From the IMG/VR virus record IMGVR_UViG_3300032334_002567, positions 310,001 through 374,000 of that record: a stretch of 64,000 nucleotides of DNA, one strand, 5' to 3'. Of the stretch, positions 559 to 50,000 are shown one piece after another; positions within the stretch are counted from its first letter, which is position 1, and each line of letters opens with the position of its first letter. The notes under the pieces are model-generated. The model did no database searches. It was not told where the DNA came from and was given only the letters and a program-made list of their open reading frames with translations. The translations under genes and the position numbers were made by a program.

Positions 559-564
559 GCTGTT

Positions 565-647
565 GCCGAAGTGGTGAAATTGGCATACACGCCAGACTCA
601 AAATCTGGTGCCCAAAAGGCGTGTGGGTTCGACCCCCACCTTCGGCA
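565..647 (+). tRNA. trnL: tRNA-Leu (anticodon CAA), CCA not encoded
   Basis: Acceptor stem GCCGAAG/CTTCGGC, anticodon arm CCAGA-CTCAAAA-TCTGG, long variable arm, T-loop GGTTCGACCC. Confidence 0.95.
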
Positions 648-672
648 TATTTAAATTGTACCCTAACAAAAC

Positions 673-2935: not shown

Positions 2936-3229
2936 ATGTACAAACTATTTATCGATGATGTTCGTGACGCCCCGGATAGCCTCTGGACGGTGTGCAGATC
3001 ATCACATCAGGCTATTGAGCATATCAAGATTTATGGTATGCCAGCCCTTATCAGCTTTGACCATGACTTGGGCGGAGAAGACACCACCATGCTTTTCCTC
3101 CGTAGACTTGTGAACGAGCTTTGGGACGGTAAAACACCACCACCCAATTACAGAGTTCATTCTGCGAATCCTGTTGGCAGCGAAAATATCAAAAGCTTTA
3201 TGGAGAGTTGGAAAAAGTCGATTGAATAA
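2936..3229 (+). CDS. Cyclic-phosphate-processing receiver (cREC-type) domain protein
   Basis: KLFIDDVR, ISFDHDLG and VHSANPVG motifs. Confidence 0.8.
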   Translation: MYKLFIDDVRDAPDSLWTVCRSSHQAIEHIKIYGMPALISFDHDLGGEDTTMLFLRRLVNELWDGKTPPPNYRVHSANPVGSENIKSFMESWKKSIE

Positions 3230-4459: not shown

Positions 4460-5023
4460 ATGTCTTACGAGAACGCTCCCCAGACGATTATGCTGGCGAC
4501 CAATTGCTGCTGCTGTGGTCGTCCGCTTTGCGATGCCATCTCTGTTGAGCTTGGTATCGGCCCGGAGTGCCGTGGTGGAAACAACGGTACTCTGACCGAG
4601 GAGCAGCGGCGTGAGTGCAACCAGCTTACACATGCTGCTGCCCTTGCGGCTCAGGAAGGAAAGATCGAAAACGTCCGATGGTGTTCGGAAGCTATTCGTG
4701 AGCTTGGCTTGCCAGAGCTTGCGGATAAGGTGGCTCACCGCTTTGTGAATGCAGAGCGGACGGCGAAGATCACCATTCGGATGGAGGACGGTATGCTCCT
4801 CGTCACTACGCCTTACAAGCGTTCGATGAAGGATGAGTTTACCGCCGCTTGGCGTAATGTCCCCGGTCGGCGGTGGGTTAGCCGGAAGCGGTGCAATGCG
4901 GTGCCTGTGAGCAGCAAGCCCCACTTGTGGGCTTTGCTCAAGCGGTTCTTCCCCGGCGAGTTCGGCATGGGCCCGAATGGGGTGTTCAGGGTTCCTGCCG
5001 AAAGCAAGAACGCCGCCGCATAG
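4460..5023 (+). CDS. DUF6011-like Zn-finger protein, C-terminus ...KNAAA
   Basis: C..CGRPL.D.IS.ELGIGPEC motif. Confidence 0.75.
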   Translation: MSYENAPQTIMLATNCCCCGRPLCDAISVELGIGPECRGGNNGTLTEEQRRECNQLTHAAALAAQEGKIENVRWCSEAIRELGLPELADKVAHRFVNAERTAKITIRMEDGMLLVTTPYKRSMKDEFTAAWRNVPGRRWVSRKRCNAVPVSSKPHLWALLKRFFPGEFGMGPNGVFRVPAESKNAAA

Positions 5024-6413: not shown

Positions 6414-6728
6414 ATGACCATGGCAATGTGCGAAGACTTCCCTTGTTGCGGACACGAGCCGGGATGCTGCCCCCGGTTCGATGAGAGCGGTCGGCAGTTG
6501 GATATGGTCTGCACTTGCGGTGCCAGACTGCCGGTTCACAATCGGTACAGTATTTGCGACCGTTGCCTTCGCATGGACGAAGACGGTTGCTATGACGACG
6601 ATTGTGAAACCTACGATGACGATGACTGCGAGGAAGACGACTGTGACGATGCCGATTGCGGTATCGAAGATCAGTTCCTCGACAGTTTCATGGAAGACCG
6701 CCTCAGTGGCGGCTTTTGTGAAGAATGA
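6414..6728 (+). CDS. Cys-rich (Zn-binding?) protein with acidic tail
   Basis: CEDFPCCGH, CTCG and C..C motifs. Confidence 0.75.
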   Translation: MTMAMCEDFPCCGHEPGCCPRFDESGRQLDMVCTCGARLPVHNRYSICDRCLRMDEDGCYDDDCETYDDDDCEEDDCDDADCGIEDQFLDSFMEDRLSGGFCEE

Positions 6729-6781
6729 AACACGGTTGCCGGGGCGGGTTGAGACTAACTCCCCGCCCCGGCCCGTTGGGG
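6729..6781 (+). repeat. AACACGG-GC hairpin-CCGTTGGGG element (copy A)
   Basis: Near-identical to the elements at 9689 and 11937. Confidence 0.85.
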
Positions 6782-7019: not shown

Positions 7020-7028
7020 AACCCACCT

Positions 7029-7066
7029 TAGGGTACAAATAAAGTAATTAAAATAATTGTACCCTA
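7029..7066. repeat. Inverted pair TAGGGTACAA-N18-TTGTACCCTA
   Basis: Direct reading of the sequence. Confidence 0.9.
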
Positions 7067-8736: not shown

Positions 8737-9117
8737 ATGGCAAGCTGGTACACCGTCAGCGAGAGCAAGATTCAGTGGGCTCCCATCGGCACCCGTGTTC
8801 TGAAGACTGGCGAGACTAAGCCGAAGTTTTCCCGGATCGGCGTCCGTATCAATATGGTGGACGGTAGCTGGTGGTTCCACAGCTTCAAGCACGATAGCTG
8901 GACGCAACACTATCCCCGGAAGCAGGCCACCGACAAGCTGGGACGGCCCATTTTCGAGGATGGTCAGCCGCTCCTGCGACCGGAACGCAAGGAAACCTAC
9001 CGCAACTGGATGGCGGTTGTGAGAGAGTTCGGCACTCGACTGCCCGCTCTGGTTGTCGCTCTGGAAAACGGTCACGCCGAAGCTCTGCTAGCCGAAGCAG
9101 AGAAAACGGCAGCGTAA
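8737..9117 (+). CDS. Hypothetical protein, C-terminus ...EKTAA
   Basis: Leader CCAACGGAGAAGCGATCATGG, shared with the gene at 8332. Confidence 0.8.
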   Translation: MASWYTVSESKIQWAPIGTRVLKTGETKPKFSRIGVRINMVDGSWWFHSFKHDSWTQHYPRKQATDKLGRPIFEDGQPLLRPERKETYRNWMAVVREFGTRLPALVVALENGHAEALLAEAEKTAA

Positions 9118-9190
9118 AACGTGTGCTAGGGGCGGCAAGGCTCTACGGCCAAAAGCCGCGAAACTGCTAGCCGCCCCTAGCCCGTTGGGG
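9118..9190 (+). repeat. GC hairpin-CCGTTGGGG element (divergent copy D)
   Basis: GCTAGGGGCGGC ... GCCGCCCCTAGC stem, then CCGTTGGGG. Confidence 0.75.
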
Positions 9191-9253
9191 TACTTATAAA
9201 TAATTGTACCCTAAAAGTGTGTTGCGAACGCCCCTCTTTTTCAAGGATGAAAA

Positions 9254-9465: not shown

Positions 9466-9690
9466 ATGACAATGCCAAATATCAACTGGTTCGACGGTCA
9501 GAATGCGGTTGGCAAGTACGTTATGGAACTCATGTACGACGACGGTAGCGTCAGCTACATGAAAAATGAGAACTACGAGCAGATTTGCCACTACTACCGG
9601 CTTGCTTTGGAAATGTCGGAAGTGGTGGGTGCGACCATCTACAACCCAAAGTGGCAAGTAGTTTGCTCGACAGCACGGGCCGCAGCGTGA
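9466..9690 (+). CDS. Hypothetical protein, C-terminus ...ARAAA
   Basis: Repeat module upstream. Confidence 0.8.
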   Translation: MTMPNINWFDGQNAVGKYVMELMYDDGSVSYMKNENYEQICHYYRLALEMSEVVGATIYNPKWQVVCSTARAAA

Positions 9691-9770
9691 ACACGGTTGC
9701 CTGGGCGGGTTGAGACAAAACTCCCCGCCCTGGCCTGTTAGGGTATTTATATTGTACCCTATAGAAGTGT
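9678..9770 (+). repeat. About 90-bp linker (Ala-Ala-Ala-stop, hairpin, repeat core), near-identical to 11926..12024
   Basis: GGCCGCAGCGTGAACACGGTTGCC(T/G)GGGCGGGT...TTTATATTGTACCCTATAGAAGTGT in both copies. Confidence 0.9.
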
Positions 9771-9796
9771 CAGCCACCCCAAACACAGGAGCCAAT

Positions 9797-9958
9797 ATGA
9801 GCAATAACGAAAAACCGTACTGCTTCGAAGAAGCCCGTTTCAAGCGTGAAATGGAATACGTGGCTCGTAAGCTCAAAGAGGCGTTGGAACTCAAGGAATA
9901 CGCCAAACAACTGGCAAAAGAAAAAGAACAAAAAGAGAAAGAGGAAAGCCGGGACTAA
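9797..9958 (+). CDS. Small charged coiled-coil protein
   Basis: AGGAG RBS after the repeat at 9750. Confidence 0.7.
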   Translation: MSNNEKPYCFEEARFKREMEYVARKLKEALELKEYAKQLAKEKEQKEKEESRD

Positions 9959-9987
9959 CACCCCCGGTTCTCTTTTTTAGTCGGCCA

Positions 9988-10033
9988 TAGGGTACAAATA
10001 AAATAAAAAGGGATATACAATAATTGTACCCTA
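9988..10033. repeat. Inverted pair TAGGGTACAA-N26-TTGTACCCTA
   Basis: Direct reading of the sequence. Confidence 0.9.
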
Positions 10034-10040
10034 TAACAGT

Positions 10041-10155
10041 GTGAATGATTGCGAGGCCGCACCATCGGCACTACTGTCCGGTTGCAAACGGCAGTAACTC
10101 GCGGGAGCGGTATGCCGAAAGGCAGCGAGTGGTGCACCCCATCGCAATCGTTCAC
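10041..10155 (+). ncRNA. Structured ncRNA (~115 nt) occupying its own unit of the array
   Basis: 14-bp closing stem 10041-10054/10142-10155; GCACCA/TGGTGC; hairpin 10072-10096; CTCGC/GCGAG; TGCC-GAAA-GGCA; no RBS or ORF between two repeat copies. Confidence 0.75.
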
Positions 10156-10209
10156 AACAAAACAATTGTACCCTAGAAAAGTGTTCGATTCACCCCAACG
10201 GAGACGATC

Positions 10210-10545
10210 ATGACTTTCGTCAACCTGACCCCGCACACGATCACTGTGGTTCTCGACAATACCAGCGTGCAATTCCCGGCTTCTGGCAACGTGGCCCGTG
10301 TTTCCACCAGTCGAGTCTCTGGCCCCACGCTAACCGTCTACGGCGATTCTGTCGGTATCCAGACTTCCCGTGTCGAGTTCGGGGCAGTCGAGGGGCTTCC
10401 CGATCCCGTGGACGGCACGGTTTACATTGTGAGCGGAATGGTCGCAGCCCGTGTCAACCGGCCCGACGTTTTCGCTCCCGGTGAACTGGTGCGTGATGCA
10501 AACGGCCAGCCCACCGGCTGCAAGGGTCTGACTTGCAGCGGTTGA
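10210..10545 (+). CDS. Hypothetical phage protein (VNLTPH.I N-terminus)
   Basis: Repeat module upstream; N-terminal motif I recall from phage hypothetical proteins. Confidence 0.8.
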   Translation: MTFVNLTPHTITVVLDNTSVQFPASGNVARVSTSRVSGPTLTVYGDSVGIQTSRVEFGAVEGLPDPVDGTVYIVSGMVAARVNRPDVFAPGELVRDANGQPTGCKGLTCSG

Positions 10546-10602
10546 TTATTATAATTGTACCCTATAGAAGTGTTCGATCCCAACCCCAACGGAGACTCAC
10601 GA

Positions 10603-11043
10603 ATGAACGACATTCTTCTCGCCGCCCTGACCAGCTGCTTCAGCAAGATGGCAAAGGCCGCTGGCCCGATTGCCCCCGGCCTGCACCAGGTCGATGAAAC
10701 GATCACGATGCGGGTCAAGGGCGAGGTGCTGAAGTCGGACGACGAAACCTACGTCCCGACGATTGCGATTCCCGTCAAGGCCGTGATGGCTACGTTGCTC
10801 CCCCGGTTGGGTGCGACACGGGAGGCTGCGATGGAAACGCTTATCGCCGCCATGACTGAAGCGGTCAATCTGGACAAGCTGGGCGATGAAACGCTCAAAG
10901 CCCGGATGAAAGACGTTGACGCGGCTTTCGAGCATGTGCAGAACGTGCTCGACGCCCTCCCGCCAAAGACACGGACGGGAAAGACGAACGTGGACGTGAC
11001 CCTTGTGGTCGCTCCCACGCCCGCCGTCGCACTTGTCCCGTGA
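10603..11043 (+). CDS. Hypothetical protein
   Basis: CCCCAACGGAG then ATG 10603. Confidence 0.8.
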   Translation: MNDILLAALTSCFSKMAKAAGPIAPGLHQVDETITMRVKGEVLKSDDETYVPTIAIPVKAVMATLLPRLGATREAAMETLIAAMTEAVNLDKLGDETLKARMKDVDAAFEHVQNVLDALPPKTRTGKTNVDVTLVVAPTPAVALVP

Positions 11044-11045
11044 CG

Positions 11046-11098
11046 ATACGGCATCGGGGGCGGGAGGAACTAACAACTCCCGCCCCCACTAGCCGTTT
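11046..11098 (+). repeat. GC hairpin (GGGGCGGGAG/CTCCCGCCCC; copy E)
   Basis: Same stem family as 5028 and 6729. Confidence 0.75.
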
Positions 11099-11152
11099 GT
11101 GCAATTGTACCCTATTGGTTTGTGTGATTCGTCCCTTTACTTTGGAGCAGTT

Positions 11153-11335
11153 ATGGAAGCGAAAATCGAGAACGGCTTTCTGGTTCTGCGAGTCCCGATG
11201 AATGCAACGCCGATTCGTTCGTCTACCGGCAAGACTTTGGTGGTTGCCTCGACCTATGGCAACAAGGCAACCGAAGTGACGGTGGACGGCAAGACGGTCA
11301 CCGTGGGCGTCAACGCCTATATCAAGGCCGCTTGA
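11153..11335 (+). CDS. Small conserved beta-rich protein (S.TGKTLVVAST.GN), C-terminus ...YIKAA
   Basis: GGAG RBS; ATG 11153. Confidence 0.8.
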   Translation: MEAKIENGFLVLRVPMNATPIRSSTGKTLVVASTYGNKATEVTVDGKTVTVGVNAYIKAA

Positions 11336-11356
11336 CCCCAACGGTTCGGATCGAAA

Positions 11357-11393
11357 GCCGGAGGGGACAGCCACCCCCTCCGGTTCTTTTTTT
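11357..11393 (+). terminator. Rho-independent terminator, repeated at 12470
   Basis: CCGGAGGGG-ACAGCCAC-CCCCTCCGG followed by TTCTTTTTTT. Confidence 0.85.
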
Positions 11394-11402
11394 AGCCCGC
11401 CA

Positions 11403-11439
11403 TAGGGTACAAATAAATATATAAAATAATTGTACCCTA
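11403..11439. repeat. Inverted pair TAGGGTACAA-N17-TTGTACCCTA
   Basis: Direct reading of the sequence. Confidence 0.9.
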
Positions 11440-11482
11440 GATAAGTGTTCGATCTAACCTTCCCTCTCACTTGGAGTCAACG

Positions 11483-11551
11483 ATGATCGCTCTCGTTCTC
11501 GCGTTTGGCCTTGGTTTCGCCGCCATTTCTGCCGTTTACTGGGTGCTGTAA
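11483..11551 (+). CDS. 22-aa single-helix membrane peptide (MIALVLAFGLGFAAISAVYWVL)
   Basis: TTGGAG RBS inside its own repeat-bounded unit. Confidence 0.55.
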   Translation: MIALVLAFGLGFAAISAVYWVL

Positions 11552-11644
11552 AGCTCCCAGTCTAACACCTGAGTGATTAGGGTATAAAGTAATTGTACCC
11601 TAGATAAGTGTTCGATCCGATCCCACCCCAACCGGAGACGCACG

Positions 11645-11938
11645 ATGAAGAACGCTTTCGACCGCACGAACAGCATGAAGAACAAGCTCAAGGCCGATTG
11701 GAACCGGATGGTGGGGGAACTGGTGTCCATCCCCGCCGGTTGCCAGATTCACAGCCTGACGCTCACGCAGACCAACTTCGGTTGGGTCTACGCCCGGAAG
11801 CACGGCCAGCCCGTGCCGGTCGCCCAGTTGCGGAACGCCGCCGTGACGAAGGGTTACTGTATCCTGCACGACGGCCCCAACTTCCGGGTGGCCCTCCCGC
11901 CGAAGCGGAACGGGGAGCCGGTCAAGGCCGCAGCGTGA
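11645..11938 (+). CDS. Hypothetical protein, C-terminus ...VKAAA
   Basis: Repeat module upstream. Confidence 0.8.
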   Translation: MKNAFDRTNSMKNKLKADWNRMVGELVSIPAGCQIHSLTLTQTNFGWVYARKHGQPVPVAQLRNAAVTKGYCILHDGPNFRVALPPKRNGEPVKAAA

Positions 11939-12024
11939 ACACGGTTGCCGGGGCGGGTCGAGACTAACTCCCCGCCCCGGCCCCGTTGGGGTACTTGTAT
12001 TTATATTGTACCCTATAGAAGTGT
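11926..12024 (+). repeat. Linker copy C (Ala-Ala-Ala-stop, hairpin, repeat core)
   Basis: Near-identical to 9678..9770. Confidence 0.9.
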
Positions 12025-12054
12025 TCGATCCCCACCCCCAACCGGAGCCGCCCC

Positions 12055-12444
12055 ATGTTGAATGAAGCGTTCTTTCAGGTGTGCAACGATGCCGTCCCCG
12101 CAAAGTCCAGCTACGTCTCGCTCTACGTCAACGTGCCGTACTACGGTGGGCCGGAGGAAGGTGGATGGTGGGGCAGTGACACCGCACTAGTCGCTCACTA
12201 CAAGTGTGACAGCCAGCCCCATGCCGAAGCTGTGAAGGCCCGTGTCGAGGAGCTGGCCCAGCAGTTGAGCGACGATGCCCGCCGGTCGTTTGGTCAAGCC
12301 TGCAAGGCCCAGTGTGAATGGCTGGACGCACGTGGGTTGGACGCCGACTACCTGCCCGAAGTGGACGGGGAGGAAACCTACTGGGTCGCCGTCGAGGATC
12401 GCCCCGGTGAACACGCCAGCCAAGGGTGCAGGCACTACGAATAA
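12055..12444 (+). CDS. Hypothetical phage protein (YGGPEEGGWW motif)
   Basis: Repeat module upstream; stop abuts the next repeat. Confidence 0.8.
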   Translation: MLNEAFFQVCNDAVPAKSSYVSLYVNVPYYGGPEEGGWWGSDTALVAHYKCDSQPHAEAVKARVEELAQQLSDDARRSFGQACKAQCEWLDARGLDADYLPEVDGEETYWVAVEDRPGEHASQGCRHYE

Positions 12445-12469
12445 AATTGTACCCTATCAAGCACACCGA

Positions 12470-12504
12470 CCGGAGGGGACAGCCAACCCTCCGGCTTTCT
12501 TTTC
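12470..12504 (+). terminator. Rho-independent terminator, paralogue of 11357
   Basis: CCGGAGGG-GACAGCCAA-CCCTCCGG followed by CTTTCTTTT. Confidence 0.8.
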
Positions 12505-12513
12505 AGCCCGCCA

Positions 12514-12552
12514 TTGGGTACAAATAAAGTAATACATAATAATTGTACCCTA
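12514..12552. repeat. Inverted pair TTGGGTACAA-N19-TTGTACCCTA
   Basis: Direct reading of the sequence. Confidence 0.85.
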
Positions 12553-12699
12553 GTAATATACAGGAGGGTATTACAAAGATAATAATACAGAAATAAAAAG
12601 CGAAAACCTTTTAAAAAAATTGTACCCTAGGTACCCTCCCCCCCGCAATTACTGTCTTATTTTTTAAGTCGTCCTGACTTTTTTTCCCGTATTAGCACC

Positions 12700-12768
12700 G
12701 TTGCAAAATCCCGGTTACAAACGTTGCAAAATCCCGGTTACAAACGTTGCAAAATACCAGTTACAAAA
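12700..12768 (+). repeat. Three tandem 23-bp repeats GTTGCAAAAT(C/A)CC(G/A)GTTACAAA(C/A)
   Basis: Copies start at 12700, 12723 and 12746. Confidence 0.9.
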
Positions 12769-13611: not shown

Positions 13612-14154
13612 ATGTTATTTTTTAGAAGTTTTATTTGTTTTAGGTTAAATGGGAAAATAAATTCAAAAACAGTTAGTGAATTTGAAGAAATACTTTCAAA
13701 TTGTTTAAAAACAAAACAAAATATACTTCCTATAGTAATAAACTCAACAGGAGGTTGTGCTTATTCTTTAGTATCTTTATATGAAAAAATTAAAAAATCA
13801 AAAATAAAAGTAGCAACAATAGTTGAGCACAAAGCATTATCAGCAGCGGCATTTCTTCTGTCTTGTGGCAATCAAGGATACAGATATATGGCCAAAGAAG
13901 CAGTTGTTATGATACATGATGCACATTCAGCGGATTTAAAACCAGACTTAAAAGAAATAGAAAGAATTAATAGCGTATTATACAACATATTAGAAAACAA
14001 CTCTAATAAAAAAAACAACTTTTTTAAGAACATAATGCAAGACAATAAATGTTCAGATCTATATCTAAATGCTGAACAATGTCTCAAATATAAAATTATT
14101 GATTTTATTGGAATTCCTATAATTAAATCAATAATAGAAAAAGAATATTCATAG
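13612..14154 (+). CDS. clpP: ClpP-like protease subunit
   Basis: INSTGG, KALSAAAFLLSCG (catalytic Ser) and VMIHD (His) motifs; DLYLNAEQCLKY.IID tail. Confidence 0.85.
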   Translation: MLFFRSFICFRLNGKINSKTVSEFEEILSNCLKTKQNILPIVINSTGGCAYSLVSLYEKIKKSKIKVATIVEHKALSAAAFLLSCGNQGYRYMAKEAVVMIHDAHSADLKPDLKEIERINSVLYNILENNSNKKNNFFKNIMQDNKCSDLYLNAEQCLKYKIIDFIGIPIIKSIIEKEYS

Positions 14155-19610: not shown

Positions 19611-19970
19611 ATGAGCAATAATTCTTTTAAATCGTGGTTGAAACTATCGGAAGATGGTGGAGGTGCCGGTGGTGGTGGAGGTGCCGGTGGTGGTGGAGGT
19701 GCCGGTGGTGGTGCCGGTGGTGGTGGAACTAGTGGTGGTGGAACTAGTGGTGGTGGAACTAGTGGTGGTGGAACTAGTGGTGGTGGAACTAGTGGTAGTG
19801 GAACTAGTGGTGGTGGAACTAGTGGTGGTGGAACTAGTGGTGGGCAAAATCCTCCCATGGGCAGTGGAACTGGCAAAGATAATATCGCCAAAGTTCCTAC
19901 ACGTTGGGGATGTTGTGGAATTTGGCCATATTGGAAAAAGAAAAGAAGAAAAAAGAAAAAAAGTGGATAA
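19611..19970 (+). CDS. Gly-rich repeat protein with a basic C-terminus
   Basis: (GGGGA)n then (GGGTS)n from 15-nt tandem repeats at about 19660-19842; ends KKKRRKKKKSG. Confidence 0.65.
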   Translation: MSNNSFKSWLKLSEDGGGAGGGGGAGGGGGAGGGAGGGGTSGGGTSGGGTSGGGTSGGGTSGSGTSGGGTSGGGTSGGQNPPMGSGTGKDNIAKVPTRWGCCGIWPYWKKKRRKKKKSG

Positions 19971-47000: not shown

Positions 47001-50000
47001 TTATATTCGGAGACGCAGAAGACATACAAGATTCTATAGGTGATGCCAAATTAACAGCTCTCGCAAAACTTAGTGAGAAGCTCGGAAGATCACAATTATC
47101 TGGTGTTGAATATGAGGTAAAAGTAAGTAAAGATTTTGTAGAAGCAACAGCTAAATGGTCAAAAGAGAATGAAGATGCAGCTCTAGGTTTAAAGAAATCT
47201 ATGGATGCACTTAAGGCAGGAGAAGGTGGAGCAGGAAGATCAAATTTACCAATAGTGCCAGCACCGGCTGCAAGAATTGAACCTGCACAAGCGGCTACTA
47301 AGGCAGTTGAAATGGAGAAAGATGAAAAATTCCAGAGAGACATGAAGATTTTTGGAAAAGGCAAAGCCACAGAGAAGTACTATCGTAGAAAATCGCTTGA
47401 AGAGGCTGTTACAAAGAATAACCCCACAGTTCAGCAAGACAGAAAACAAGAAACGGCACAATCAGCAGCTAATGCTGGAGTCAAAGCATATGGCGAGAAA
47501 AGCAAGCCGCTGACTGTTGAGTATAAAGTAGATATACTATTCATGCATGATAGTGCTAACATAAGAGAATCTTTAGAAGAGGCTGCTACAGAAGCTAAAG
47601 CCATGATAGCAGAAAGACTAGGAGTAAAAGAAGTACTAGGATCACAAGTTAAAATAGAATACTCTATAGACAAGAAAACAGAACAAGCAATAGCAACGGC
47701 CACATATACACCCGACAATAAGTTCTCTGAATTTCTTACAGAACAAAACAGAAGAGTAGCTGGTGTTCCTGCTTCGACAAATATAATACCTACCAATTCT
47801 GGGAGGACTAAAAATTCTGGTATTGGGGACGCCGTTATAGAAAAGGGTATGCTAGAAGCTTCTGCGAGAGAAGCAATTATAGGAAAGACAGAAATAGCCA
47901 TAGAAGTTGCAGAAAGAAAGGCAGAAGACAAAGCTAGAAAAGCCTTAGGTGCAATGATGGCCAAATCAGGAATTAAAGATTTTATTGGCATTGAAGTAGA
48001 TTCAGAAATAGAAGGTAATATTGTCAAGGCTACAGCACGTTGGTCTGAAGAAGCTCAAAAAGAGGCAAAGGGACTAAGAGAAAGCTTTGAAACTTTAGGT
48101 GCAAGCAAGGGAGGGTTAGGAAGAGCAGGTATGCTGCAGGCACAGGAACCAGCTCAAGCAGCAACACAAGCATCAACACAAGCAGCAACACAAGCAACAA
48201 AGACATCGACGGCTGCATTCGATCAATTCGATATTATAGAACAGCGACAAATAGAAGCAGAAAATCGTCTTCTAGACGCTGCTGCAAAGCAAGGGGTGAG
48301 TGGACCTTTACTTAGTGGTATAACTTCGGGTAAAAGTATAGCTGTAAGCACTGGTATTACCGGAGTTCAGGATGCAACAAAGGCAATAAAAGCTCAACAA
48401 GCTCAACAAGCTACAAAAAAAGAACCAGCTCAAGCAGCAACTATAGCTACAAAAAATAGTCCCGTTGTTCAACAGGCACAAAAAATGGAGCCAGCACAAG
48501 CCGCAGTAGACGCTGGCGTTAGATCAGCTAGCGAGAAAAGCAAGCCACTGACTGTTGAGTATAAAGTAGATATACTATTCATGCATGATAGTGCTAATAT
48601 AAGAGAGTCTTTAGAAGAAGCCGCCACAGAGGCTAAAGCTATGATCGCAGAAAGACTAGGAGTAAAAGAAGTACTAGGATCACAAGTTAAAATAGAATAC
48701 TCTATAGACAAGGAAACAGAACAGGCAATAGCAAAAGCCACGTATACACCCGACAATAAGTTCTCTGAATTTCTTACAGAACGAAACAGAAGAGCAGCTG
48801 GTGTTCCTACTTCGCCAAATACAGTGCCAGCCAAGTCTGGGGCGGCTAAGACATACACTTTTGGAGACGCAGGTATCGAGAAAGGTATGCTAGAGGCTTC
48901 TGCTAGAGAAGCAATTATAGGAAAAACAGAAATAGCCATAGAAGTTGCAGAAAGAAAGGCAGAGATAAAAGCCAGAGAAGCCTTGGGTGTAATGATGGCT
49001 AAATCAGGAATTAAAGATTTCATTGGAATAGAAGTAGATTCAGAAATAGAAGGTAACATTGTCAAGGCTACAGCACGTTGGTCTGAAGAAGCTCAAAAAG
49101 AGGCAAAGGGACTAAGAGAAAGCTTTGAAACTTTAGGGGCTAGCAAGGGAGGTCTAGGTAGAGGTGGTATGCAGATACAAATGCAAGAACCAGCACAAAC
49201 AGCAACAGCTGCTACGCAGTCAAATCCTGTTGTTCAGCAAGCTACAAAACCAGAACCAGCACAAGCAGCAACTAAGGCAGTTGAAATGGAAAAGGATGAA
49301 AAATTCCAGAGAGACATGAGAGTTTTTGGAAGAGGAAAAGCAACAGATAAATACTATCGTAGAAAATCGCTTGAAGAGGCTGTTGCAAAGAGCAATCCTA
49401 CAGTCCAGCAAGCTACAAGAACAGAACCAGCACAAGCAGCAACCGCTTCTACAAATTCAAATCCTGTTGTTCAGCAAGCTACAAGAACAGAACCAGCACA
49501 AGCAGCAACTCAAATAGCACAGCCTATGGCTCAACCGCAAAGTTTACCAGCACAAGAAAGATTTTTAATTACCAAAGATGTAAAAACTAATAAAGATTCT
49601 ATTGAAGTGGTTCTAAGAAAAGAACTAAAACTTTTAGATGATGAAGAATTAGAAGAAGAAATATTAACAACTAAAGTATTTGAAATATTAAAGAAAAAAG
49701 GTATAAGTCCATCAGGAGTAAACCTTGATACCAGTTTAAAACAAGGAATTTTAGAAGTTAAAGCCACAACAAGCCCAGAAGATCTTAGTTTTTCTGAAGG
49801 CCTTAGCAAGGAATTTTCAAGGATTAATGCTGGCGGTGGTGGCGTGGGAAGATCAGCAATCCAACCAACAATAGCACAAGAACAAATGCAAGCTGCAAAT
49901 CAGGTTGTTGCAGAGGCTACAGCAAGAATGACAAATAAGTCAGAGTCCTCATTTAATGCTGCTGAAAAGATGGCTATTTTAGATCTTAAGGGAACTTTAT

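What the first reader, a model, noticed from the sequence alone, without database searches (positions are those of the whole stretch)
9678..12024. A duplicated ~90-bp linker appends Ala-Ala-Ala-stop, hairpin and the next start module to unrelated genes
Seen: 9678-9770 and 11926-12024 are near-identical from GGCCGCAGCGTGA (the last three codons and stop of two non-homologous ORFs) through the hairpin to TTTATATTGTACCCTATAGAAGTGT. Copy 6729 shares the hairpin but not the Ala codons. Inference: the linker is a portable junction that gives a captured gene a degron and a 3' structure; this is the most direct sign of recombination between units.
Basis: partly seen in the sequence, partly recalled or inferred. 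Interest (0 to 1): 0.75.

Follow-up and report, generated by a model that had tools for sequence, protein, structure and literature searches.

The report
Portable terminator-promoter junction with Ala-Ala tail
Two unrelated small genes of a 381-kb freshwater jumbo phage share their last three alanine codons, their stop codon, an RNA hairpin and the next gene's promoter, because a ~95-bp junction cassette is copied and exchanged within a 50-kb array of small genes; the Ala-Ala protein end it carries looks like a degradation tag that the phage's own ClpX/ClpP protease could read.

Summary
Window 9678-9770 and 11926-12024 are 86% identical, with 24 bases exact. The match starts sharply 12 nt inside two non-homologous ORFs, so both end Ala-Ala-Ala-stop.

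The segment is a composite junction: a G/C stem-loop, then a second hairpin that buries the promoter core, then a phage-specific promoter-like motif (TTGTACCCTA), then a 5'UTR with SD. About 72 such junctions punctuate a 50-kb, GC-heterogeneous array of roughly 110 small genes.

Relatives from other lakes keep both copies. They share polymorphisms between the two copies, which points to ectopic exchange. The slots just downstream of each copy hold different gene cassettes in different relatives. This matches the PeSL promoter/stem-loop cassettes of T4-like phages, built here on a non-sigma70 promoter.

The Ala-Ala end is not a by-product of the DNA.
- It changes only synonymously.
- It is enriched in the array (9 of ~113 genes, against 2 of 447 elsewhere).
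- It recurs with other codons and other hairpins.
- It ends 48 of 114 homologues of one array protein, after spacers of variable length.

The phage encodes ClpX with all the Ala-Ala-binding residues, plus two ClpP. Degron function is inferred, not shown. No deletion variant could be tested, because only contigs were available.

The parts
9466..9690 (+). Gene A, 74 aa, an ORFan that ends ...STARAAA-stop
   Evidence: ORF and frame. There are no Pfam or PHROG hits. Homologues of 78-88% identity all end TARAAA. The AF2 model has pLDDT 80, its last strand is residues 65-70, and the tail 71-74 has low confidence.
9678..9690 (+). Copy 1 of the shared coding tail GGCCGCAGCGTGA (Ala-Ala-Ala-stop)
   Evidence: In relatives the Ala codons change only synonymously (L011 has GCC GCT GCC).
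9693..9738 (+). Copy 1 of the G/C-rich stem-loop, with a U.U mismatch in this genome
   Evidence: RNA fold of 9688-9765: -35.8 kcal/mol, z -4.6. In the alignment of 15 copies, 98% of cells are paired.
9739..9761 (+). Second hairpin, AGGGUAU..loop..GUACCCU, whose 3' arm is the promoter core
9752..9775 (+). Promoter-like motif TTGTACCCTATAGAAGTGT, followed by a 5'UTR with SD AGGAG at 9787-9791 and ATG at 9797
   Evidence: 72 same-strand copies lie in G000:272-322.6 kb; consensus tAaAatAATTGTACCCTA..TGTTCGA. It is not a sigma70 consensus.
9797..10165 (+). Variable slot after copy 1. In this genome it holds a 53-aa gene (9797-9958), a terminator, and a promoter-driven structured RNA (10040-10162)
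   Evidence: Relatives differ here: L004 has an 83-aa gene, L011 has 106-aa and 80-aa genes, and L010/L012/L013/L015 have nothing, so the linker abuts the 111-aa gene.
11645..11938 (+). Gene B, 97 aa, GC3 0.90, ends ...EPVKAAA-stop
   Evidence: The close homologue P0006 keeps KAAA. The remote homologues P0007 (ends VSKG) and P0008 (ends PQSA) do not. AF2 model: pLDDT 85, last strand ends at residue 83, residues 91-97 average 53.
11926..11938 (+). Copy 2 of the shared coding tail GGCCGCAGCGTGA
   Evidence: L010 and L012 have GCC GCT GCG, a synonymous change.
11941..11986 (+). Copy 2 of the G/C-rich stem-loop (18 pairs)
   Evidence: -45.2 kcal/mol for 11936-12019, z -5.0. One stem pair shows the series G-C > G.U > A-U among relatives.
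11987..12015 (+). Second hairpin, GGGGUAC..loop..GUACCCU, burying the promoter core
12006..12054 (+). Promoter-like motif plus 5'UTR plus SD (GGAG 12045-12048) of the next gene (12055-12444, 129 aa)
   Evidence: In L004 this ~50-nt stretch is present twice, flanking an extra 51-aa gene. L011 has a 54-aa gene here and L010 an 81-aa gene.
6726..6781 (+). Copy 0: the same stem-loop after gene 6420-6728 (ends CEE-stop), with no Ala codons and no promoter after it
9103..9217 (+). Diverged member of the same junction family: ACG GCA GCG TAA (T-A-A-stop), a larger stem-loop, GGGGTAC, then the promoter
13612..14154 (+). ClpP-family protease gene about 1 kb past the end of the array. It is context for the degron reading, not part of the junction
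   Evidence: PF00574, 69 bits.

Best explanation
The repeat is a composite terminator-promoter junction cassette, the functional analogue of the PeSLs of T4-like phages. It sits in a ~50-kb hyperplastic array of ~110 small, mostly ORFan genes in a 381-kb freshwater jumbo phage. Each copy reads: the last codons and stop of the upstream gene; an 18-bp G/C stem-loop that probably ends, attenuates or stabilises the upstream transcript; a small hairpin whose 3' arm is the promoter core; the phage-specific promoter-like motif TTGTACCCTA; and a 5'UTR with Shine-Dalgarno for the next gene. Because about 70 junctions share 30-95 nt of homology, the phage's general recombination machinery uses them as crossover points. 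Cassettes are gained, lost and replaced just downstream of them, and junction copies convert one another. In one such event the left crossover fell 12 nt inside a coding region, so two unrelated genes now share Ala-Ala-Ala-stop. That tail has been kept because a C-terminal Ala-Ala is itself useful. It most likely acts as an ssrA-like (C-motif-1) degron that hands these small proteins to ClpXP, probably the phage's own ClpX with its ClpP, and so limits their lifetime. Shown here: the anatomy, the conservation, the cassette turnover at the junctions, the shared polymorphism, the enrichment and protein-level conservation of Ala-Ala ends, and the presence of a competent-looking phage ClpX. Inferred: promoter and terminator activity, the recombination mechanism, and the proteolysis. 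My confidence is about 0.8 for the junction and recombination part and about 0.45 for the degron part.
For: Anatomy and repeat.

Array: 72 same-strand promoter motifs in G000:272-322.6 kb. GC3 of neighbouring genes ranges 0.30-0.90, against ~34% GC for the rest of the genome. Gene 12055-12444 is 75-80% identical in DNA to actinophage genes.

Turnover at the junctions: there are four different contents after copy 1 and four after copy 2 in relatives. The 51-aa unit in L004 is flanked by a duplicated promoter/5'UTR. One gene sits at different array positions in the window and in L004.

Ectopic exchange: 4 of 7 variable sites among copy-2 orthologues carry the same two alleles as copy-1 orthologues (GCA/GCT, loop C/T, ACAC insertion, TAC/TGC). 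A GAGAAT loop variant is shared only by copy 0 and copy 2 of L004.

RNA level: stems are 98% paired, loops vary, and one pair shows G-C > G.U > A-U.

Gene families recur in arrays of other phages that use different junction motifs (L032, L033, G001).

Ala-Ala ends:
- Only synonymous changes in the Ala codons, 4 of 4.
- 9 of ~113 array genes end AA, against 2 of 447 elsewhere (Fisher 1.6e-5). 7 of the 9 are followed by hairpins from at least five sequence families.
- G001's array has 4 of 71.
- L036 has 6 of 19, with different codons (binomial 3e-9).
- In the DUF6011 family 48 of 114 end AA. Of members with a 2-15-residue tail, 44 of 70 end AA after K/E-rich spacers of 1-13 residues.
- The PRKAA tail is conserved between G000 paralogues and a G001 homologue.
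- The tails are predicted to be unstructured.

ClpX and ClpP: the phage ClpX scores 545 bits, over the equivalog cut-off. It has a Zn finger, a Walker A motif, GYVG, ITRDV and GRKHP, which are the six residues that contact Ala-Ala-COO- according to PMC7652416. There are two ClpP genes, one of them 1 kb from the array end. G001 has ClpX too.

Literature: the PeSL definition and mechanism (PMC2839356; PMC4122927). Terminal Ala-Ala is the key ClpXP determinant (PMC7652416; PMC10862746).
Against: - No transcript data exist, so promoter and terminator activity are unproven. The main stem-loop is not followed directly by a U tract.
- Covariation support is thin: one compensatory pair, and 129 of 500 shuffles do as well.
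- Shared polymorphisms could in part be assembly chimeras between strains within a 95-nt repeat.
- No deletion or circle junction was seen, but only contigs could be examined.
- Gene A has no remote homologue, so which gene donated the tail is unknown.
- Ala-Ala is necessary but not sufficient for strong ClpXP degradation in E. coli (PMC10862746). The residues before it here (K, R, E, T, A) are not the optimal Leu.
- The host and its ClpX are unknown.
- In G001 the Ala-Ala ends do not associate with hairpins.
- The 60-aa KAA gene's homologue in G001 ends YPPK, so the tail is dispensable for at least some families.
Confidence: 0.65

Rival explanations
1. Convergence. The mobile or duplicated unit starts at the stop codon, as in copy 6729. 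Both genes acquired an Ala-Ala-Ala end independently under protein-level selection, and the identical codons are coincidence.
For: Ala-Ala ends arise repeatedly with other codons and other hairpins. Copy 0, and the 9117/288609 pair, share the hairpin only from the stop codon on.
Against: The identity covers GCC GCA GCG and the preceding G, 10 coding bases in all. Given typical Ala codon usage, three identical codons are expected about 2% of the time (my estimate). The GCA/GCT polymorphism at the same Ala codon occurs in both copy sets, so exchange tracts include the codons. The diverged member at 9117 also has GCA GCG before its stop.
Confidence: 0.1
2. The 13 nt are conserved for a nucleic-acid reason, for example an upstream element of the terminator, a processing site or a recombination signal. 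On this reading the three alanines are a translational by-product.
For: The association of AA ends with downstream hairpins in G000 (7 of 9 against 13 of 104, Fisher 5.8e-5). The 13 nt are invariant in most relatives.
Against: Where the 9 nt do change they change at third positions only, and the protein stays AAA (4 of 4). AA ends in this array and in L036 use many different codons. The predicted folds do not use these bases consistently. The DUF6011 family shows selection on the terminal residues across very different DNA contexts.
Confidence: 0.08
3. The Ala-Ala end is functional but is not a self-destruct tag. The small proteins might be decoys or competitive inhibitors that saturate the host ClpXP or its trans-translation clean-up. 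Alternatively the tail might dock them to the phage ClpX as adaptors or partners rather than substrates.
For: The enrichment and conservation are the same as for the main explanation. The phage ClpX itself ends ...NKAA in both jumbo phages. Many tails have a hydrophilic K/E spacer rather than the hydrophobic residues that make the strongest E. coli degrons (PMC10862746).
Against: Nothing here distinguishes it from the degron reading. The simplest expectation for an accessible Ala-Ala-COO- with a competent ClpX is degradation (PMC7652416).
Confidence: 0.15
4. Site-specific cassette system of the integron type, with the hairpins acting as attC-like recombination sites.
For: An array of small cassettes, each followed by an imperfect inverted repeat. 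Cassette content varies among relatives.
Against: There is no tyrosine recombinase in the 381-kb record (the record is 79% complete). Every cassette has its own promoter. Breakpoints map to the promoter/5'UTR homology, as with the duplicated ~50 nt around the L004 51-aa unit, not to the hairpins. Many junctions have no hairpin at all.
Confidence: 0.03
5. Assembly artefact: a repeat-induced misjoin or a collapsed duplication.
For: The genome comes from a metagenome, and the repeats are shorter than the reads.
Against: The same two copies sit at the same two positions in independent assemblies from JGI, ENA and Logan, from other samples (L004-L007, L010-L015, and the 146-kb IMG/VR contig). The source run's contigs cover both copies without differences.
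Confidence: 0.01

Closest known systems
PeSLs (promoter-early stem-loops) of T4-like phages phi1/RB49, PST, nt-1 (Arbiol et al. 2010, PMC2839356; Comeau et al. 2014, PMC4122927)
   Same: A ~100-bp composite intergenic cassette that runs from the upstream gene's stop codon, through an AT-rich stretch, a promoter and a GGGG...CCCC stem-loop, to the SD and start of the next gene. The cassettes are concentrated in hyperplastic regions full of ORFans. Insertions, deletions and replacements between close relatives are bounded by the elements, and they are proposed to act as homology for general recombination.
   Different: The promoter here is not sigma70-like: TTGTACCCTA, and TAGGTCCAGTGTACCCTAG in a sister phage. 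The stem-loop precedes the promoter, and a second hairpin buries the promoter core. The array is far larger (~72 junctions in 50 kb) and lies in a 381-kb freshwater phage. Here one cassette pair extends into coding sequence and carries an Ala-Ala-Ala end. Activity and mini-circles were shown experimentally for PeSLs but not here.
ssrA tag and other C-motif-1 ClpX degrons ending Ala-Ala-COO- (Flynn 2001/2003 as cited in PMC7652416; PMC10862746). Natural Ala-Ala substrates such as Caulobacter CtrA are cited from my own knowledge.
   Same: An accessible C-terminal Ala-Ala. [quoted passage not shown]
   Different: The tail is genome-encoded on phage proteins rather than added by tmRNA. The residue before Ala-Ala is K, E, T, A or R rather than Leu. 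No degradation data exist.
Integron gene cassettes with attC sites
   Same: Arrays of small, often ORFan cassettes, each followed by an imperfect inverted repeat, with cassette content differing between relatives.
   Different: No integrase was found. Each unit has its own promoter and SD. Exchange points lie in promoter/5'UTR homology.
Morons of lambdoid phages (Hendrix), and Botstein's linker sequences for modular exchange (as discussed in PMC2839356)
   Same: Single genes flanked by their own promoter and terminator. Conserved linkers target exchange to harmless sites.
   Different: [quoted passage not shown] Here, as in PeSLs, they appear to.

Membership tests
PeSL-type promoter/stem-loop junction cassette | Composite intergenic element spanning stop codon, AT-rich stretch, promoter, stem-loop, and SD/start of the next gene | tested here: met
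   definition from PMC2839356.
PeSL-type promoter/stem-loop junction cassette | Promoter matches the sigma70 -35/-10 consensus | tested here: not met
   Sigma70-type sites are not enriched (6 found, 4.7 expected) and none coincides with the repeated motif. The motif is TTGTACCCTA. So this is an analogue, not a homologue. The PeSL authors describe similar non-sigma70 analogues at the T4 IP loci.
PeSL-type promoter/stem-loop junction cassette | Stem-loop with a G tract followed by a C tract | tested here: met
   GGGGCGGG...CCCGCCCC; folds of -35 to -50 kcal/mol with z of -3.2 to -5.5.
PeSL-type promoter/stem-loop junction cassette | Concentrated in a hyperplastic region of ORFans, with indels and replacements between close relatives bounded by the elements | tested here: met
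PeSL-type promoter/stem-loop junction cassette | Demonstrated promoter and terminator activity, and excised mini-circles | not testable with these tools
   Only assembled contigs of DNA runs were served. No RNA was laid.
ClpX C-motif-1 (ssrA-like) degron | Protein ends in Ala-Ala with a free carboxylate | tested here: met
   RAAA-stop and KAAA-stop, conserved in all close homologues.
ClpX C-motif-1 (ssrA-like) degron | The tail is unstructured and accessible | tested here: met
   AF2 prediction only: the last strands end at residues 70 of 74 and 83 of 97, and tail pLDDT is 53-58.
ClpX C-motif-1 (ssrA-like) degron | A ClpX with Y153/V154, T199/V202 and R228/H230 equivalents is available | tested here: met
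   The phage ClpX has GYVG, ITRDV and GRKHP and aligns to solved ClpX at 441 bits. Residue roles come from PMC7652416. The host ClpX is unknown.
ClpX C-motif-1 (ssrA-like) degron | Favourable residues upstream of Ala-Ala (such as Leu at -3) and a tag of sufficient length | tested here: inconclusive
   The tails are ARAAA, VKAAA, KNAAA, EKTAA, YIKAA and PRKAA. Arg or Ala at position 2 is favourable in E. coli, but there is no Leu.
ClpX C-motif-1 (ssrA-like) degron | ClpXP-dependent degradation that is abolished by AA>DD | not testable with these tools
   This needs an experiment.
Intrinsic (Rho-independent) terminator | Stable G/C hairpin immediately followed by a U tract | tested here: inconclusive
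   The hairpin is present, but the main stem is followed by GUUGGGGUAC. Only a smaller alternative hairpin (11974-11992, 9727-9744) precedes a U-rich tail. The neighbouring junction at 11356-11395 is a canonical terminator.
Integron cassette array | Tyrosine-recombinase integrase and promoterless cassettes with attC | tested here: not met
   No PF00589 hit in the record. Each cassette has its own promoter motif.

The most novel reading that the evidence does not exclude
The junction is a plug-and-play 'express, terminate and expire' cassette. In jumbo phages that carry their own ClpX and ClpP, a genome-encoded ssrA-mimic (hydrophilic spacer plus Ala-Ala-COOH) is a portable tag. It puts newly captured small genes under a phage-run proteolytic timer, and it can be transferred together with the terminator and the next promoter by recombination between junctions. 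The conserved ...NKAA end of the phage ClpX itself would make the protease self-limiting.
Probability: 0.3. Interest if true: 0.8.

Novelty: new variant of a known kind. Interest (0 to 1): 0.6.

Why it matters
This extends the PeSL idea, in which regulatory junctions double as recombination linkers that shuffle ORFans. The idea moves from T4-like coliphages to an uncultured 381-kb freshwater phage with a different promoter type and a far larger array, and it shows junction copies exchanging sequence. More interestingly, it exposes a protein-level signal that seems not to have been described for phage accessory genes. Ala-Ala C-termini are strongly enriched in such arrays, and they recur after variable spacers in a large phage protein family. 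They co-occur with a phage-encoded ClpX that retains every Ala-Ala-binding residue. If these are degrons, phages would time the lifetime of early or accessory proteins by mimicking the ssrA tag. That is directly testable with reporter fusions, and it could be used to recognise short-lived phage effectors from sequence alone.

Tried and rejected
- Read evidence for the 9770-11926 deletion. All 13 runs are held only as Logan contigs. Laying four of them gave many 'joints' with 19-35-nt sides, which are cross-matches of the repeated promoter. One joint, 9690>11938 in X3 (51-nt side), is best explained by a relative whose copy-1 hairpin equals this genome's copy-2 hairpin (compare L010). This gives no verdict on deletion variants.
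- Exact-pattern scans for the hairpin in IMG/VR and in JGI metagenome contigs found only this phage, its near-identical 146-kb contig, and chance hits.
- One IMG/VR scan was wasted on a promoter pattern with the wrong spacing, which was my error. The corrected scan found the sister phage G001.
- Rfam: no family for the hairpins or for the 10040-10162 RNA; only tRNA-Leu matched.
- ESM Atlas look-alikes of the 74-aa protein scored 0.83 or less and were uninformative.
- Foldseek against PDB gave no match with E < 0.08 for either protein.
- Covariation test of the stem: too little variation to be significant.
- Stop-codon read-through or recoding of the TGA before the hairpin was considered and rejected. 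The downstream frame is open in copy 2 but closes after 16 codons in copy 1 and 8 codons in copy 0 (sequence). No alternative genetic code was used.
- Paralogy of genes A and B was rejected (sharp boundary).
- NCBI cluster names for DUF6011 homologues gave nothing.
- The record behind L036 could not be searched for ClpX.
- Complex prediction was not used. A ClpX hexamer plus substrate exceeds its size limit, and the host is unknown.

Full report
**Where the window lies.** The window is G000:C1:310001-374000 of a 381,443-bp IMG/VR virus record, estimated 79% complete. The genome is about 34% GC, except for G000:272,000-322,620 (window up to ~12,620), where GC rises to 41-57%. That stretch holds 72 same-strand copies of TTGTACCCT(A). 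The consensus is tAaAatAATTGTACCCTA..a..TGTTCGA. Each copy lies 30-60 nt upstream of a Shine-Dalgarno (often CCCCAACGGAG) and the start of a small ORF. About 110 plus-strand genes fill the array. Most have no Pfam or PHROG hit. Five tRNA genes are interspersed. GC3 of neighbouring genes ranges from 0.30 to 0.90. Gene 12055-12444 is 75-80% identical at DNA level to genes of Gordonia and Mycobacterium phages. Both observations suggest a heterogeneous origin for the array genes. Runs that hold this sequence are lake and freshwater metagenomes.

**Checking the observation.** Gene 9466-9690 (74 aa) ends CGG GCC GCA GCG TGA, and gene 11645-11938 (97 aa) ends AAG GCC GCA GCG TGA. The 24-mer GGCCGCAGCGTGAACACGGTTGCC occurs exactly twice in the window, with none in 100 shuffles. 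Window 9678-9770 aligned to 11926-12024 gives 86 identical of 100 columns. The 90 nt to the left are 25.6% identical, so the boundary is sharp. The proteins are unrelated. A third copy at 6729 shares the stop and the stem-loop but not the Ala codons, and it has no promoter after it. A fourth, diverged member at 9115-9217 follows ACG GCA GCG TAA. Its stem-loop recurs nearly unchanged at G000:288609 after a gene ending LVL-stop.

**Anatomy of the junction.** As RNA, each copy folds into two adjacent hairpins. The first is an 18-pair G/C stem (ACGGUUGCCGGGGCGGG ... CCCCGCCCCGGCCCCGU). The second is a short hairpin in which GGGGUAC pairs with the GUACCC of the promoter core across an AU-rich loop. 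The fold gives -45.2 kcal/mol (z -5.0) for copy 2 and -35.8 (z -4.6) for copy 1. The same GGGTAC(AA)...(TT)GTACCC inverted repeat accompanies most junctions that have a terminator-like hairpin.

The main stem is not followed directly by a U tract. A neighbouring junction at 11356-11395 is a textbook intrinsic terminator. The repeated promoter-like motif is not a sigma70 consensus. The genome has no T7-type RNA polymerase hit but has three sigma70-region-2 hits. A phage sigma factor reading a -10-like TACCCT is therefore a reasonable guess, but it is only a guess.

**Relatives.** Close homologues of both proteins (78-90% identity) exist only in syntenic arrays on lake metagenome contigs from other samples: L004-L007, L010-L015, and a near-identical 146-kb IMG/VR contig. 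All keep TARAAA and PVKAAA.

Both linker copies are present at the orthologous positions, but what follows them differs.
- After copy 1:
  - this genome has a 53-aa gene plus a promoter-driven structured RNA;
  - L004 has an 83-aa gene;
  - L011 has 106-aa and 80-aa genes;
  - L010, L012, L013 and L015 have nothing, so the linker is fused directly to the 111-aa gene.
- After copy 2:
  - this genome and L005 have nothing;
  - L004 has a 51-aa gene;
  - L011 has a 54-aa gene;
  - L010 has an 81-aa gene.

The ~50-nt promoter/5'UTR at window 12006-12057 aligns to both flanks of the L004 51-aa unit. That is the footprint expected of homologous exchange between junctions. A gene with 77% DNA identity sits at different array positions in the window and in L004.

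**Exchange between the copies.** In an alignment of 15-17 linker copies, four of the seven variable sites among copy-2 orthologues carry the same two alleles as copy-1 orthologues. These are GCA/GCT in the second Ala codon, the loop C/T, an ACAC insertion, and TAC/TGC. A GAGAAT loop variant is shared only by copies 0 and 2 of L004. My rough estimate for four such coincidences by independent mutation is ~5e-5. This points to gene conversion or ectopic recombination whose tracts include the Ala codons. One caveat is that strain-level assembly chimeras inside a 95-nt repeat could contribute.

The stems are almost invariant (13 of 18 pairs never vary, 98% of cells paired) while the loops vary. One pair shows G-C > G.U > A-U, as expected for a plus-strand RNA structure. 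There is too little variation for statistical support (129 of 500 shuffles do as well).

**More distant arrays.** A deep HMMER search with the 97-aa protein found two remote homologues. P0008 (87 aa) ends ...ARPQSA and P0007 (82 aa) ends ...GVSKG. Homology stops at residue ~86, so RNGEPVKAAA is lineage-specific. P0008 lies in an array with the promoter variant ATTGTACCT and the same inverted-repeat architecture. P0007 lies in an array with a different repeated motif (TAGTACGGTC) and CCCTCCCC..GGGGAGGG terminators. Both arrays also hold homologues of other window genes, in a different order.

A 340-kb sister phage, G001, has an analogous 28-kb array with about 65 copies of TAGGTCCAGTGTACCCTAG. 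Gene families therefore move between arrays, and each phage lineage has its own junction sequence. This fits junctions that are homogenised within a genome.

**The Ala-Ala end is a feature in its own right.** By the promoter-anchored gene calls, 9 array genes in G000 end in AA: EAA, PRKAA twice, EAA, KNAAA, KTAA, RAAA, KAA and KAAA. That compares with 2 of 447 ORFs elsewhere in the genome. The binomial test gives 5e-9 and the Fisher test 1.6e-5. Seven of the nine are followed by strong hairpins belonging to at least five unrelated sequence families, against 13 of 104 other genes (Fisher 5.8e-5). The codons differ between genes.

Among relatives, the Ala codons of four tails changed four times, always synonymously. 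The two PRKAA genes are paralogues, and their G001 homologue ends PTKAA. The first gene of both arrays is RuvB-like and ends AA in both phages. G001's array has 4 of 71 AA ends. An unrelated 177-kb, 56%-GC contig (L036), with a different junction motif (GGGACACC), has 6 of 19, again with varied codons (3e-9).

The strongest evidence comes from the DUF6011-family protein at 4460-5023, which ends KNAAA. It has 114 homologue clusters, of which 48 end in AA and 71 end in A. The conserved core ends GPQGxF[RK][IV]P. Of the 70 members with a further tail of 2-15 residues, 44 end AA after a K/E-rich spacer of 1-13 residues, for example KAA, EAA, GDKKKKAA and KKDDEKKDDAA. The homologue in Myxococcus phage Mx1 stops at the core. 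Selection therefore acts on the terminal dipeptide itself, not on any particular DNA. AF2 models place both tails beyond the last secondary-structure element, with low confidence.

**A protease to read the tail.** The phage encodes a full-length ClpX at G000:194772-196031. It scores 545 bits on TIGR00382, over the equivalog cut-off, and 441 bits to a solved ClpX. It has the zinc-finger cysteines, a Walker A motif, and GYVG, ITRDV and GRKHP. Fei et al. [quoted passage not shown] They also show that human ClpX, which lacks the T199 and H230 equivalents, does not degrade ssrA substrates.

Two ClpP-family genes are present. One is at window 13612-14154, about 1 kb beyond the array. G001 has ClpX as well, and both phage ClpX proteins themselves end ...N(K)KAA. 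Jumbo-phage ClpX and ClpP have been noted before, without a link to substrate tails (PMC7824862). A randomised-tag screen found terminal Ala-Ala in 91% of the strongest E. coli degrons, necessary but not sufficient (PMC10862746). The degron reading is therefore well motivated, but it remains an inference.

**Comparison with what is known.** The closest known system is the PeSL of T4-like phages. PeSLs are ~100-bp cassettes running from the stop codon through an AT-rich region, a promoter and a GGGG...CCCC stem-loop to the next SD. They are dense in hyperplastic regions, bound the indels between close relatives, and are proposed, with mini-circle evidence, to mediate modular shuffling by homologous recombination (PMC2839356; PMC4122927).

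All the structural and comparative criteria are met here. The exception is the sigma70-type promoter, so this is an analogue built on another promoter, as the PeSL authors already described for the T4 IP loci. An integron-like mechanism is unlikely: no tyrosine recombinase was found, every unit has its own promoter, and the breakpoints lie in promoter homology. Two things are new relative to PeSLs. One is the extension of a cassette into coding sequence. The other is the link to a recurrent, protein-level Ala-Ala end and a phage-borne ClpXP.

**What could not be settled.** Deletion or circle variants could not be assessed, because only contigs were available. Promoter and terminator activity remain untested for lack of RNA data. 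Which gene donated the tail is unknown, because gene A has no remote homologue. Whether the tails cause degradation has not been tested. No alternative genetic code was invoked, and nothing in this work touched a toxin or effector gene.

**Verdict.** The linker is a portable junction and a site of recombination, and it is a new variant of a known kind. The 'degron' idea survives with independent and rather striking circumstantial support, but the tail belongs to a wider phenomenon than this one linker.

Noticed in passing
window 10024-10165: A promoter motif is followed not by an ORF but by a 123-nt RNA closed by a 17-bp terminal stem (10040-10162; MFE -60.7 kcal/mol, z -6.8). It has no Rfam match. 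It is present in L004 and absent from L010 and L012. It is a candidate phage small RNA with its own promoter.
   Followed up: partly
G000:194772-196031; G000:88767-89186; window 13612-14154; G001:149979-151229: The phage encodes a complete ClpX and two ClpP-family proteases, and the sister phage G001 also has ClpX. Both phage ClpX proteins end ...N(K)KAA, unlike the cellular ClpX sequences they align to.
   Followed up: partly
window 7022-7066, 9981-10033, 11396-11439, 12507-12552 and others: The inverted repeat (A)GGGTACAA - AT-rich 15-25 nt - TTGTACCC(T) flanks promoters that follow terminators. In RNA it sequesters the promoter core; in DNA it could be a dimeric binding site. In G001 the post-terminator promoters are a distinct subclass (TCTATTGTACCC rather than TCCAGTGTACCC).
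   Followed up: partly
window 564-648; G000:284552, 284840, 287661, 294124: Five of the phage's ten tRNA genes sit inside the small-gene array, between a gene and the next promoter motif. No tmRNA was found.
   Followed up: yes
G000:272380-273465 and G001:265584-266681: The first gene of both arrays is a RuvB-like AAA+ ATPase (PF05496, 41.7 bits; 64% identity between the phages). It is a branch-migration-type protein sitting at the head of a recombination-prone region.
   Followed up: partly
window 12055-12444: A 129-aa gene (PHROG 24642) has 75-80% DNA identity over ~100 nt to Gordonia and Mycobacterium phage genes, despite the 34%-GC backbone. GC3 of array genes ranges 0.30-0.90.
   Followed up: partly
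G000:296837-297115, 297859-298107; G001:279186-279452: A family of ~85-aa proteins has AT-hook-like GRGRP/GRPRK motifs at both ends and a conserved ...(R/T)KAA terminus.
   Followed up: partly
window 9466-9690: The AF2 model of the 74-aa protein weakly resembles the T4 antitoxin Dmd (5hy3_B; prob 0.96, TM 0.58/0.72, but E 0.8) and other small phage inhibitors (AcrIF9, phi29 p56). This is a lead only.
   Followed up: no
window 2936-3229: A stand-alone cREC_REC (cyclic-phosphate processing receiver) domain protein sits in the array (PF20274, 76.7 bits).
   Followed up: no
window 19639-19866 and 47267-50800: There are 15-nt tandem repeats (GGTGGTGGAACTAGT-type, Gly-rich coding) and long internal repeats of 200-300 nt with CAAGCAGCAACA-type Q/A/T-rich units in large genes of the low-GC part of the window.
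   Followed up: no
window 12447-12700: The array ends with three promoter motifs in 180 nt that are not followed by convincing ORFs. The last overlaps a GTACCTAGGGTAC palindrome, and then GC drops to 33%.
   Followed up: no
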